In this document: piece by piece, positions 6,101 through 9,100 of the stretch
Layout: each line of letters opens with the position of its first letter
Numbering within the stretch: the first letter of the stretch is position 1
From: Styela clava
Lineage: Eukaryota
NCBI RefSeq assembly: GCF_964204865.1
Contig: NC_135260.1
Location: 13,888,001 to 13,952,000, forward strand
Length of the DNA: 64,000 nucleotides
Direction: 5' to 3'
Position numbers and translations under genes: made by a program
Notes under the pieces: model-generated
Databases searched by the model: none
What the model was told of the DNA's origin: nothing
Seen by the model: only the letters and a program-made list of their open reading frames with translations

Positions 6101-9100
6101 TTTTAGTTTAAATAAAAATATGATAGTGACTTAAAATTTGGATTAAATATTCGAATGATCGTTTAAATCGGTAAATTTTCTTGAATTAAACATTTAAACC
6201 TACTGTTGTTTGTTTGACTCAAATGAAGCAAGTGAGGCTGACAATTGACAAACTTGGTTGGTATTCTTGCATTAGTGATTGTCTCTGTTTCCCTGAGTTT
6301 TTAGGTTGTTCACTCTTCGTTACTCTTATGTACCGGTAAGTGTCTGAAATCTCAATCTCTATTATGAAAAAAATTAACCAAAATAACTTTCACAACCATA
6401 TTGTTCATATACTCAGATCTTACTGCCCTTACAACGTTTCATGACTGTCACACTACCACAAGGTGACACTGTGGGTACATCTGTTCAAGAGCAATCAACA
6501 TCTGGACGATCTTCATCAAATGCCCCTACTCGGAGTCATGATCCCTTTCCTGAACATGCTGTCCATATTGTTGGGTTTGAAGACATTGTAAGTGTTTTAA
6601 ATTGTACTCGTATGCCATTTGCCAGACTTTACTAAACAGATACCATTAGAACAGCTTAACAGACTGTAAACAATACCATAACACAGAAACAGTAATGTAT
6701 GCGGTGGGGATAGAACTAGAGTAATCATGAGCATCCTGTGTGTCTAGCAATTACAACTATTTCAACTAAAAAACAATTGCATTTTAATATTATAATCTAC
6801 TGTGTATTTTATATTTATTTTTCACTCTTTCAACAATTTACCACGTGTATAGGTTCATTCAAGTTAGAACTGCTAGTAGTAGATTGAAAATTCTTTACAT
6901 GCTTGGTGTGGTTTATACGAATGTTGCCAGCTGATTTTGGCGCATTTTAAGCACCACAGTCTTTATTTTTTTGAAACTGTTTATAAAAGATTCAAGAGTC
7001 TTGCTGCCCCTGACACAAGTGTATTTCCATCCTTCTGAGGAACAAAGCAAATAAGATGACTTAATTATATGGCACGTCACGGCCTCTCCTCCGGTTACCA
7101 ATTCATGTTGAGTATGGGATTAGTTAGCCATTTATTTGTTTTAAGTACATGGACTTGATTGACATAATATTGTCATCTTTATTCATCCCACAATTTATCT
7201 GCATTATGCACATATGGATCCACCAGCGCAAAGGAAGGATTGGTAGTCACTAGTCAGTCTCGCATAACCCCAGTCCCCAACCGATAGTTATTTATATGAA
7301 CACTGTTATTCCCAGCTGCTTGTAATGATTTTAAAATACTCTAGATTGAAGTTCTCCCTTCTCTTCAACGGCCAAAGAAAGTGAGCATTCGTGCAAGTGA
7401 CGGTCGTTCATATTTATTCCTGTGTAAACCCAAAGATGATCTGAGAAAGGATGCAAGACTTATGGAGTTTAATACAATAGTTAATAAATGTTTGAAACTC
7501 GATTCAGAAACAAGAAAAAGACAACTTAAAATTAGAACTTATGTAAGTAGTTTTTTTCCATTGGAAGTTATTACTATTCAGATAATTTAGTTTGAATGTA
7601 AACTTGCAGACCCTGGGGTCCAGCGGAATCCTTGTTAAAACTACTGAACTACTTCAAAATCTATAATTAGTTGTAGTATTATTAGAGTTTCATCAATGTT
7701 AAATACGTTCTCAATGTGTTTTGTTTAATATTTTTGCTGATTTTATTTGAATTACTCCAACCCTTATCTCAAGAATATATATATTTTTAGGCCTTATTTT
7801 TTTAGTATCTAATTTTCCCAAAATAAACCTCAGGCTGTTATTCCTCTCAATGAAGAATGTGGATTAATTGAATGGGTTCCACATACCAGAGGTTTTCGTC
7901 ATATTTTGATTGCGAGATACAAACAAATGGGAACTCATTGTACCAACAGAGAACTTGTTACCTATATTGTACAGAAAACAGCTCCATTACAGTAGGCAGT
8001 CACAGATTGTGTGTGTCTTCGATTGGTAAAGATATTTCAAATGCATGTGGTGTCACAACTTTGCTCAAAAATAGTTTTATTTGATAAGGTTAACGAAAGA
8101 ACAAATTTTGAATATTATTGTTGTAATTTTATTTACATCATCCTGAACAAGGACTTGATTTGAGCAGTTCACACCCGGGAATATAGTTGCAAAATATCCG
8201 AGTTGCCAGCAATCTTCCGTCTGGCTGTAGTGAGGTTTTGAGCTGGCAGTGGCTACTGAACTTACAAGACTCGAACCTGCGCTCTCTAATATATACGGGC
8301 GATATATGCTAGATACAAGTAAAGTAAGACAAACAACCTGTATTTAAAATAAATCAGTATTGATGAAGGCAAAAATTGAATAAATCATTTTCTTATGTAA
8401 ATTTGTGTCAAATTTTTGTTTTCGTTCACAGGCTGTGGTACCATTAAACGAAGAATGTGGTTTAATAGAGTGGGTGCCTAATACCCATGGACTTCGGAAT
8501 ATTTTGTTAAAAATATATCGATCTAGGGACATGTACACTTCTGGAAAAATTTTGAAATCACTGCAATTGCCTTATTCTGCACCTTTGGAGTGAGTGTGTT
8601 GCACAAGTTTGTGTTTTATATTCAAGCACTGTTTTAACTTTGATTAATATTTTTCTGAGGAGTTGATTTTGAATGCTTTTTTTGTTTATCATCCTGAATA
8701 TATTGCATCAATTTTCAAACCTTACTTTATATAGTATTTAGCAAATTGGCAACGTTCATTTTTCTAAAATTTTCTCTAAAATTTCAATATTTTCTAAATT
8801 TTTGCAATTAGTTTATTTATTATTTATTTATTGCAATTTAGTTAATTTTAAGTGTTCAGACTTTTTCCTCAAAATGATTTCACCAGCAACTTCGTAATTA
8901 CCAGGGCAATGTATTCTAATAGTTTACTCATCTGCGACATCTTTGTCATTAATCAAGTTTACTTTACAATCCTTTGAAGCTAAATCGTACCACAGAATAG
9001 CTGAGAAATATTTTAAAGGTCACTTCACCATAAAAACTTTATCATACACATGGCCAAATGAAATATGTAGAAAGTCAACATCTGAATACATGGTTTTCTG

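What the first reader, a model, noticed from the sequence alone, without database searches (positions are those of the whole stretch)
7834..8589. ATR has two interchangeable versions of its kinase hinge exon (candidate mutually exclusive splicing)
Seen: two tandem paralogous exons, each exactly 158 bp, each with AG/GT sites, identical phases and no stop codon. Their N-terminal halves are nearly identical in protein (AV[I/V][13 protein letters not shown]) despite many synonymous DNA differences, while the C-terminal halves diverge ([35 protein letters not shown] vs [35 protein letters not shown]). Because 158 is not a multiple of 3, including both or neither shifts the frame upstream of the catalytic DRH/DF motifs. 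Known: the IEWV segment is the ATP-binding hinge of ATR, and the following helices lie where PIKKs carry a variable insertion (the LST8-binding element in mTOR). Inference: the old duplicate is under purifying selection and yields two ATR isoforms with the same ATP pocket but a different adjacent surface, possibly tissue- or stage-specific. I know of no described mutually exclusive exon pair in ATR, but I could not search the literature.
Basis: partly seen in the sequence, partly recalled or inferred. Interest (0 to 1): 0.88.

Follow-up and report, generated by a model that had tools for sequence, protein, structure and literature searches.

The report
ATR kinase with two swappable exons
The ATR checkpoint-kinase gene of the sea squirt Styela clava has two tandem, mutually exclusive versions of the exon that forms the ATP-binding hinge; the pair is real and shared with other sea squirts, it is already in RefSeq's automatic isoform models, and what the second version does is untested.

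Summary
Exon A (7834-7991) and exon B (8432-8589) are both 158 nt, each with AG/GT splice sites. Each is open in one frame only, and they are the only two copies in the genome.

- **Identity.** The window matches Styela clava ATR. RefSeq already lists isoform X1 with exon B and isoform X2 with exon A. The two proteins differ only at residues 2490-2540.
- **RNA.** One contig joins 7542>7834 and 7991>9455, so A is included and B is skipped. Another joins 8589>9454. No A-to-B joint was listed.
- **Frame.** Including both exons, or neither, shifts the frame into early stop codons.
- **Conservation.** The same tandem pair (158 + 158 nt, 435-nt intron) lies in metagenome contigs from a Ciona-like tunicate. 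A-type exons also occur in a Clavelina lepadiformis isoform and in a Logan ORF. A-types form one clade (89/85), and the tunicate B-types form a clade with the same branching order.
- **Selection.** Synonymous sites are saturated, while non-synonymous divergence between A orthologues is close to that between B orthologues.

The verdict is a genuine, ancient tunicate mutually exclusive exon pair, a new member of a known kind. I found no paper describing it. The functional difference and any tissue specificity remain untested. The scan's notes list further candidate pairs in this genome.

The parts
7345..7542 (+). ATR exon upstream of the pair (ends ...IRTY, phase 0; donor TAT|GTAAGT)
   Evidence: matches Styela clava ATR residues about 2422-2487. 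RNA contigs are spliced onto 7345 from the preceding exon (loose ends).
7834..7991 (+). Exon A, 158 nt: the divergent (A-type) version of the hinge exon. It has a weak acceptor tract and a weak donor (CA|GTAGGC).
   Evidence: 100% match to RefSeq isoform X2, XP_077973819. RNA contig with joints 7542>7834 and 7991>9455. A-type orthologues in L012, Clavelina X4 and P0001.
7992..8431 (+). Intron between A and B, 440 nt. It contains a stretch (about 8031-8446, running 15 nt into exon B) that RNA contigs cover at higher word depth than the ATR exons.
   Evidence: The first AG upstream of B's acceptor is 63 nt away, so the branch point is not near A's donor.
8432..8589 (+). Exon B, 158 nt: the canonical (B-type) version of the hinge exon. 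It has a strong acceptor tract and a strong donor (GA|GTGAGT).
   Evidence: It matches RefSeq isoforms X1 and X3. Joint 8589>9454. It is closer to human ATR than A is (52.5 against 42 bits).
9454..9598 (+). Downstream ATR exon. Its first base completes the split codon (Q after A, E after B). Donor ATG|GTGCGT.
9879..9983 (+). Next ATR exon, carrying the catalytic loop (GDRHGEN motif). It is read in frame only if exactly one of A or B is included.

Best explanation
This is a genuine pair of mutually exclusive exons in the ATR gene of Styela clava. It arose from a tandem exon duplication that predates the split between Styela and the Ciona/Clavelina side of the tunicates.

Each mature mRNA carries A or B, giving two full-length ATR kinases of 2760 aa. 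They share the strand and ATP-binding hinge ([14 protein letters not shown]). They differ in the helix after the hinge and in the stretch leading into the LBE-equivalent insertion of the C lobe.

**How exclusivity is kept.** B is the default exon and has strong splice signals. A has weak signals, so it probably needs an activator or repression of B. The reading frame enforces the choice at the mRNA level. Because 158 is not a multiple of 3, A+B gives a stop five codons into B, and skipping both gives a stop 19 codons into the next exon. Both stops lie far upstream of the last junction, so such mRNAs should be removed by nonsense-mediated decay.

**What is shown:** the exon anatomy, the spliced A-only form, the RefSeq isoform pair, conservation in other tunicates, and purifying selection.

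**What is inferred:** removal by nonsense-mediated decay, regulated choice, and a functional difference in substrate gating or regulation through the LBE-side surface.
For: - **Anatomy and paralogy.**
- **RNA.** Run X3 contig 8 covers 7407-7542, 7834-7991 and 9455 onward, with GT..AG intron ends. A separate joint 8589>9454 has similar word depth (4.17 against 4.1). No 7991>8432 joint was listed.
- **Variants.** The contig's differences from the reference in A (7911, 7956), the extra A the contig carries at the 7991>9455 joint (read here as 9454 G>A), and the difference in B (8497) are all synonymous.
- **RefSeq.** XP_077973818 (X1, exon B) and XP_077973819 (X2, exon A) are both 2760 aa and differ only at residues 2490-2540. 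The older pair XP_039273119/20 shows the same swap.
- **Frame.** Early stops follow A+B and skipping of both.
- **Conservation.**
  - L010-L012 carry a tandem pair of 158 + 158 nt with AG/GT sites and a 435-nt intron, between the same flanking exons. That gene is 67% identical to Ciona savignyi ATR.
  - Clavelina isoform X4 and Logan ORF P0001 carry A-type exons sharing a C..RE[LI] signature.
  - The A-types form a clade at 89/85 and the tunicate B-types at 94/79, with mirrored branching.
- **Selection.** In the variable half, pN is 0.415 for A against its orthologue and 0.375 for B against its orthologue. Paralogue comparisons give 0.50-0.68, and pS is about 0.95-1 in both orthologue comparisons.
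Against: - The RNA support obtained here is a single 325-nt contig in one of four runs. Logan contigs cannot give isoform ratios, and the runs' RNA status is a guess.
- The 7542>8432 joint was not among the listed joints.
- RefSeq models may rest on the same public reads, so they are not independent of the contig.
- The only annotated A-type isoform in Clavelina ends two residues after the exon. A-type use may therefore be unproductive in that lineage.
- AU tests on 52 columns do not reject lineage-specific duplications (p 0.13-0.29).
- No regulatory element or RNA structure above chance was found.
- No functional or structural comparison of the isoforms was possible.
Confidence: 0.85

Rival explanations
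1. Exon A is mainly a regulatory ('poison') or noisy exon. Including it, usually together with the strong exon B or with a retained intron, yields frameshifted or truncated transcripts that lower ATR output. The full-length A isoform would then be a minor by-product without a function of its own.
For: - A has weak splice signals while B has strong ones.
- A+B gives an immediate stop.
- The only annotated A-type isoform in Clavelina stops two residues after the exon.
- Contigs in runs X2 and X3 cover introns around B without splicing.
Against: - A poison exon needs no conserved open frame. Yet A keeps 52 open codons, the exact length of 158 nt and a hinge motif identical to B's, across tunicate lineages whose synonymous sites are saturated.
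- The observed contig is upstream-A-downstream in frame, and no A-to-B joint was listed.
- RefSeq models a full-length X2.
Confidence: 0.1
2. Exon A is a decaying duplicate (pseudo-exon) that is occasionally spliced in by accident.
For: A is more diverged from other animals' ATR than B is (42 against 52.5 bits to human ATR), and it has weaker splice sites.
Against: - With synonymous sites saturated, A is still open, has no indels and keeps 15 of 16 hinge residues.
- The chance of an open frame of this length is about 0.02.
- Orthologous A-type exons exist in three other taxa; in L012, where DNA was available, the exon is intact, 158 nt long and flanked by AG/GT.
- pN between A orthologues (0.34) is far below pS (about 1).
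Confidence: 0.03
3. The pairs in Styela, the L012 species and Clavelina arose by independent, lineage-specific duplications of the same exon, and the A-type resemblance is convergent.
For: AU tests on the 52-column alignment do not reject holding each species' A and B together (p 0.285, 0.129, 0.154). A against its orthologue shares only 25 of 52 residues, about the same as the cross-type comparisons.
Against: - The best tree puts all four A-types in one clade (89/85), with internal branching that mirrors the B clade.
- Order (A upstream), length (158 nt) and intron size (440 against 435 nt) are the same.
- The four share an A-specific Cys and an RE[LI] motif (listing).
- In the variable half, dN is lower between orthologues (0.60 and 0.52) than between paralogues (0.83-1.78).
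Confidence: 0.12

Closest known systems
Mutually exclusive exons born by tandem exon duplication (for example PKM exons 9/10, CaV1.2 exons 8/8a, sodium-channel exons 5a/5b; reviewed in PMC9013439, PMC8373072, PMC12772994)
   Same: Adjacent homologous exons of identical length and phase. One is included per mRNA. One half is conserved and one is diverged, and the pair is old and kept across species.
   Different: The host gene is ATR, an essential PIKK checkpoint kinase, and the swapped segment is the ATP-binding hinge plus the following helix. No paper in the searched library describes such a pair in ATR or another PIKK. So far it has been seen only in tunicates.
Frame-enforced mutual exclusion backed by nonsense-mediated decay
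   Same: The exon length is not a multiple of 3. Double inclusion or double skipping creates early stops far upstream of the last exon junction.
   Different: Decay of the aberrant forms was not tested. It remains unknown how B, with its strong sites, is skipped when A is chosen.
Docking-site/selector RNA structures (Dscam type) and steric hindrance by a short intron or distant branch point (PMC6071210, PMC7969005)
   Same: Both produce the same outcome of one exon per mRNA.
   Different: No inverted repeat stood out above my chance estimate in either species. The intervening intron is 440 nt, and the AG-free zone before B is only 63 nt. Neither mechanism is supported here.
LBE insertion of PIKK kinase domains (mTOR LST8-binding element; Tel1 and Mec1 LBE, PMC6796912, PMC9523049)
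   Same: By alignment, the diverged C-terminal part of the exon runs into the position where the LBE begins. In Tel1 and Mec1 the LBE helps enclose and gate the substrate groove.
   Different: The mapping rests on weak pairwise alignments and on residue numbers taken from a paper, not on a model of this protein. No partner or gating effect is known for the tunicate isoforms.

Membership tests
Mutually exclusive exon pair from tandem exon duplication | Two adjacent exons that are homologous to each other | tested here: met
   Reciprocal six-frame hits at E about 1e-9, the only two copies in the genome; 25 of 52 residues identical.
Mutually exclusive exon pair from tandem exon duplication | Same length and phase, each with its own splice sites, both preserving the frame when used alone | tested here: met
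   Both are 158 nt with AG/GT sites. Each alone is in frame with the flanking exons.
Mutually exclusive exon pair from tandem exon duplication | Mature mRNAs contain one or the other, not both | tested here: met
   Contig upstream-A-downstream with B skipped, joint 8589>9454, and no 7991>8432 joint. RefSeq X1 and X2 differ only by the swap. Caveat: contigs show presence, not absence, and the 7542>8432 joint was not listed.
Mutually exclusive exon pair from tandem exon duplication | Both copies maintained by selection across species | tested here: met
   Tandem pair in L010-L012. A-types in four taxa form a clade. pN is far below the saturated pS.
ATR (PIKK family protein kinase) | FAT, PI3/PI4-kinase, FATC and UME domains; best match to ATR rather than to other PIKKs | tested here: met
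   The window's exons match Styela clava ATR-like XP_077973818/19 at about 100%. That protein carries PF02259, PF00454, PF02260 and PF08064. The top solved-structure hits are human ATR.
RNA-structure-driven exclusion (docking site and selectors) | Competing complementary intronic elements, one per exon, conserved between species | tested here: inconclusive
   The inverted repeats found (for example L012 9387-9407 with 10612-10632, and 9389-9401 with 9585-9597) are no better than my binomial estimate of chance for 2-kb regions. None is shared by both species.
Steric-hindrance exclusion | Intervening intron too short, or branch point too close to the upstream donor | tested here: not met
   The intron is 440 nt (435 nt in L012). 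The first AG upstream of B's acceptor is 63 nt away.
Frame-enforced exclusion with nonsense-mediated decay | Double inclusion or double skipping gives premature stops; such mRNAs are degraded | tested here: inconclusive
   The premature stops are shown. Degradation could not be tested with these tools.

The most novel reading that the evidence does not exclude
Tunicates have kept two ATR kinases in one gene for hundreds of millions of years. On this reading the A-type isoform is a specialised ATR, for example for the germ line, embryonic cell cycles or whole-body regeneration. Its altered post-hinge helix and LBE-side surface, including an A-type-specific cysteine, would change substrate gating, activator response or inhibitor sensitivity. 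This would be the splicing equivalent of a gene duplication of an otherwise single-copy, essential checkpoint kinase.
Probability: 0.35. Interest if true: 0.65.

Novelty: new member of a known kind. Interest (0 to 1): 0.45.

Why it matters
ATR is an essential, single-copy guardian of DNA replication, and no alternative versions of its kinase core appear in the literature I could search. This pair is a natural, conserved swap of the segment next to the ATP pocket and at the foot of the element that gates the substrate groove.

It offers a ready-made experiment on how that surface tunes a PIKK: two isoforms, the same gene, the same hinge. It also shows that tunicates diversify even core checkpoint machinery through exon duplication rather than gene duplication.

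The practical caveat is that the isoforms are already in RefSeq. The new content is the recognition of the pair, its age and its constraint, not the existence of the transcripts.

Tried and rejected
- **Relatives' genomic DNA.** I could not fetch the Logan contig of P0001 or the genomic loci of Clavelina or Ciona.
- **Protein searches that led nowhere.** The search for homologous proteins with P0001 returned only itself. With exon A it returned six short ORFs, none of them A-type.
- **Representative search.** The 50% representatives held one clear A-type hit, P0001, and no copy of the window's own protein.
- **RNA structures.** Inverted repeats in both species were no better than my chance estimate and were not shared.
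- **Rbfox motif.** There is a single TGCATG in each species' region. It lies downstream of A in Styela (8042) and upstream of A' in L012 (9384), against 0.35-0.6 expected by chance. This is not a conserved signal.
- **Steric hindrance and U12 introns.** Both rejected from intron length, AG-free zone and donor sequences.
- **The highly covered intron stretch 8031-8446.** I took it by eye for a tRNA-derived SINE. ARAGORN and Rfam found nothing. The own-genome DNA search returned only the locus itself, and that search skips common words. Its nature is left open.
- **Topology tests.** AU tests did not reject lineage-specific duplications.
- **ATR structure papers.** They gave no statement on human residues 2380-2416.
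- **Joined model.** I joined exons only inside one local script to read the frames across the junctions. The two isoforms were therefore not modelled.
- **L063.** This vertebrate-like metagenome contig passed through the automated tblastn screen of all 80 loci, which printed its two hits, but I did not analyse it further.

Full report
**What is in the sequence.**
The window's + strand carries the 3' part of an ATR gene. The exon ending at 7542 (...IRTY, phase 0, donor TAT|GTAAGT) is followed by two exons, A at 7834-7991 and B at 8432-8589. Both are exactly 158 nt, both are preceded by AG and followed by GT, and both are open only in frame 0. The next exon starts at 9454, and its first base completes the split codon (Q after A, E after B).

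A and B are 52.5% identical in DNA. Their first 16 codons encode 15 identical residues despite 12 base differences, 11 of them synonymous. Residues 26-52 share only 5 of 27. A six-frame search of the whole 377-Mb genome finds only these two copies, reciprocally at E about 1e-9. With the local intron composition, a 52-codon frame stays open by chance with P about 0.018.

Both peptides align to human ATR 2366-2416. B scores higher (52.5 bits) than A (42 bits), so B is the canonical version and A the derived one. A also has the weaker splice signals.

**Whose gene it is.**
A hinge-restricted protein search returned RefSeq ATR-like proteins of the ascidians Styela clava and Clavelina lepadiformis. 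Apart from HSP ends that run over exon borders into introns, the window's exons match the Styela clava proteins exactly, so the window is Styela clava or something indistinguishable from it.

The members of that 90% cluster are the key result. XP_077973818 (isoform X1, 2760 aa) contains exon B. XP_077973819 (isoform X2, 2760 aa) contains exon A. The two differ only at residues 2490-2540. The older annotation release has the same pair (XP_039273119 and XP_039273120). NCBI's automatic pipeline has therefore already modelled both exclusive forms. I found no paper that describes it.

**RNA evidence obtained here.**
Thirteen public runs of one organism hold the region, and nine look like RNA. I laid four of them on 7300-9700.

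- Run X3 contains one 325-nt contig covering 7407-7542, then 7834-7991, then 9455 onward. The skipped parts begin with GT and end with AG or GG, and one A in the contig stands where the reference has G at 9454. This is the spliced form upstream-A-downstream, with B skipped.
- The same run has a joint 8589>9454 at similar word depth (4.1 against 4.17).
- No 7991>8432 joint was listed. No 7542>8432 joint was listed either.
- The long X2 contig stops at 7543, as expected at a branch in the assembly graph.
- The contig's differences from the reference inside A (7911, 7956), at 9454 and inside B (8497) are all synonymous (my reading).

Several caveats apply. These are Logan contigs, so they give presence and not ratios. 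The runs' RNA status is a guess, and some contigs cover introns unspliced. RefSeq may have used the same reads.

**How exclusivity is enforced.**
A local frame check gives two results.

- A followed by B gives a stop at the fifth codon of B.
- Skipping both exons gives a stop 19 codons into the next exon.
- Both stops lie before the catalytic-loop exon at 9879-9983 and far upstream of the last junction.

Such mRNAs are expected targets of nonsense-mediated decay. That step is inferred, not tested.

Other known mechanisms are not supported. The intervening intron is 440 nt, and the AG-free zone before B is only 63 nt, so steric hindrance is unlikely. Both donors are U2-type. Inverted repeats in the three introns are no better than my chance estimate and are not shared with the second species. 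A single TGCATG lies near A in each species, but on opposite sides of it.

**Conservation.**
A scan of metagenome contigs with the hinge motif returned 80 loci. Three of them (L010, L011, L012) are 98.7-100% identical to each other. They carry a tandem pair in the same order, A' at L012 9408-9565 and B' at 10001-10158. Both are 158 nt with AG/GT sites and lie 435 nt apart, between the same flanking exons.

That gene is 67% identical to Ciona savignyi ATR and about 50-54% identical to the other ATR proteins compared (mostly unidentified; one is the hemichordate Ptychodera flava), so it comes from a tunicate on the Ciona side. Its third-codon-position GC is 0.75-0.83, against 0.21-0.31 in Styela. 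The loci of other organisms that I screened had one copy within their flanks, apart from one vertebrate-like contig, L063, which I did not examine further.

Two more A-type exons turned up as proteins.

- A Logan ORF (P0001) is 61% identical to A.
- Clavelina lepadiformis isoform X4 has an A-type exon but ends two residues after it, while X1-X3 carry the B-type.

All four A-types share a cysteine followed by ..RE[LI]. This motif replaces the SGK.L motif that the tunicate B-types share, and in most of the other animal ATRs compared a related G[KR]EL motif stands at that position.

A maximum-likelihood tree of 36 hinge exons puts the four A-types in one clade (89/85), split into Styela+P0001 and L012+Clavelina. 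The tunicate B-types form another clade (94/79), with Styela sister to the rest, which is the mirror image. AU tests on 52 columns do not reject lineage-specific duplications (p 0.13-0.29). A single old duplication is therefore the best-supported reading but is not proven.

**Selection.**
Nei-Gojobori counts show that synonymous sites are saturated in every comparison. Non-synonymous differences stay low in the hinge half (pN 0.13 between A and B).

| Comparison, variable half | pN |
|---|---|
| A against its orthologue | 0.415 |
| B against its orthologue | 0.375 |
| Paralogue comparisons | 0.50-0.68 |

A is thus constrained about as strongly as B. That result rules out a decaying duplicate and is hard to reconcile with a mere poison exon.

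**Where the variable part sits.**
A residues 1-32 align to mTOR 2226-2256, and B residues 2-37 align to Tel1 2506-2540. In Tel1 the residues that follow (M2547, Q2551, K2553, N2555) belong to the LBE. The LBE, together with the PRD, the FATC and the activation loop, encloses the substrate groove (PMC6796912). In Mec1 the LBE moves on activation and is proposed to act as a gate (PMC9523049).

By extrapolation, the swapped half covers the post-hinge helix and the start of the LBE-equivalent. This is inference from weak alignments. I could not model the isoforms, because no joined model was to be searched or folded and the RefSeq proteins exceed the folding limit.

**Verdict.**
This is a real, ancient, selectively maintained mutually exclusive exon pair in the kinase core of a tunicate ATR.

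- **Known kind:** it belongs to a well-known class of event, tandem exon duplication with frame-enforced exclusivity.
- **Already annotated:** the two isoforms are already in RefSeq.
- **Not alone in this genome:** the scan's own notes list 14 findings matching those search words, of which the eight displayed are candidate duplicated-exon pairs in this genome (not checked by me).
- **What is new:** its recognition in ATR, its spread across tunicates, and the evidence of constraint.
- **What is untested:** function, regulation and tissue use.

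Noticed in passing
window 8031-8446 (intron between exons A and B, running 15 nt into exon B): RNA contigs cover this mostly intronic stretch at higher word depth than the ATR exons: 20-33 in X3, and 7.9 in X1, which has no contig on any ATR exon except the first 15 nt of exon B at the end of this contig. 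A variant skips 8107>8155. By eye, the minus strand around 8255-8275 has a tRNA box-B-like GGTTCGAGTC, which suggests a SINE or an independent transcript. ARAGORN and Rfam found nothing, and the own-genome DNA search (which skips common words) returned only the locus itself.
   Followed up: partly
window 12937-14693 (+): A GC-richer island (0.42 against about 0.32) holds long open frames. The one at 13914-14693 matches Pfam DDE_1 (E 4.5e-13), so this is a pogo/Tigger-like DNA transposon just downstream of ATR.
   Followed up: partly
Clavelina lepadiformis XP_076813105 (P0279), residues 2425-2479: The only annotated Clavelina isoform with the A-type exon ends two residues after it (..LQFS), as if the transcript ran on into the intron. 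A-type use may be unproductive, or incompletely modelled, in that species.
   Followed up: no
window 8317-8406 compared with 7834-7991 and 8432-8589: The X3 contig differs from the reference at 8 sites in this 90-nt intronic stretch just upstream of exon B. Exon A shows 2 differences and exon B shows 1, all synonymous. The population looks highly polymorphic, with the exons protected.
   Followed up: partly
L063 (metagenome contig MDSQ01100237.1): A vertebrate-like ATR hinge exon fragment in a metagenome contig. It went through the automated tblastn screen of all 80 loci but was not analysed further.
   Followed up: no
same genome, other windows (scan notes s1-822873, s1-819795, s1-825800 and others): The scan's notes hold 14 findings matching the words 'mutually exclusive exon duplicat'; the eight shown are further candidate tandem duplicated exon pairs in this genome (GRP94, a phosphodiesterase, ECH1, collagen IV, otoferlin, ADAMTS, synaptobrevin, PDIA6). 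Exon duplication with exclusive splicing may be unusually common in Styela clava.
   Followed up: no
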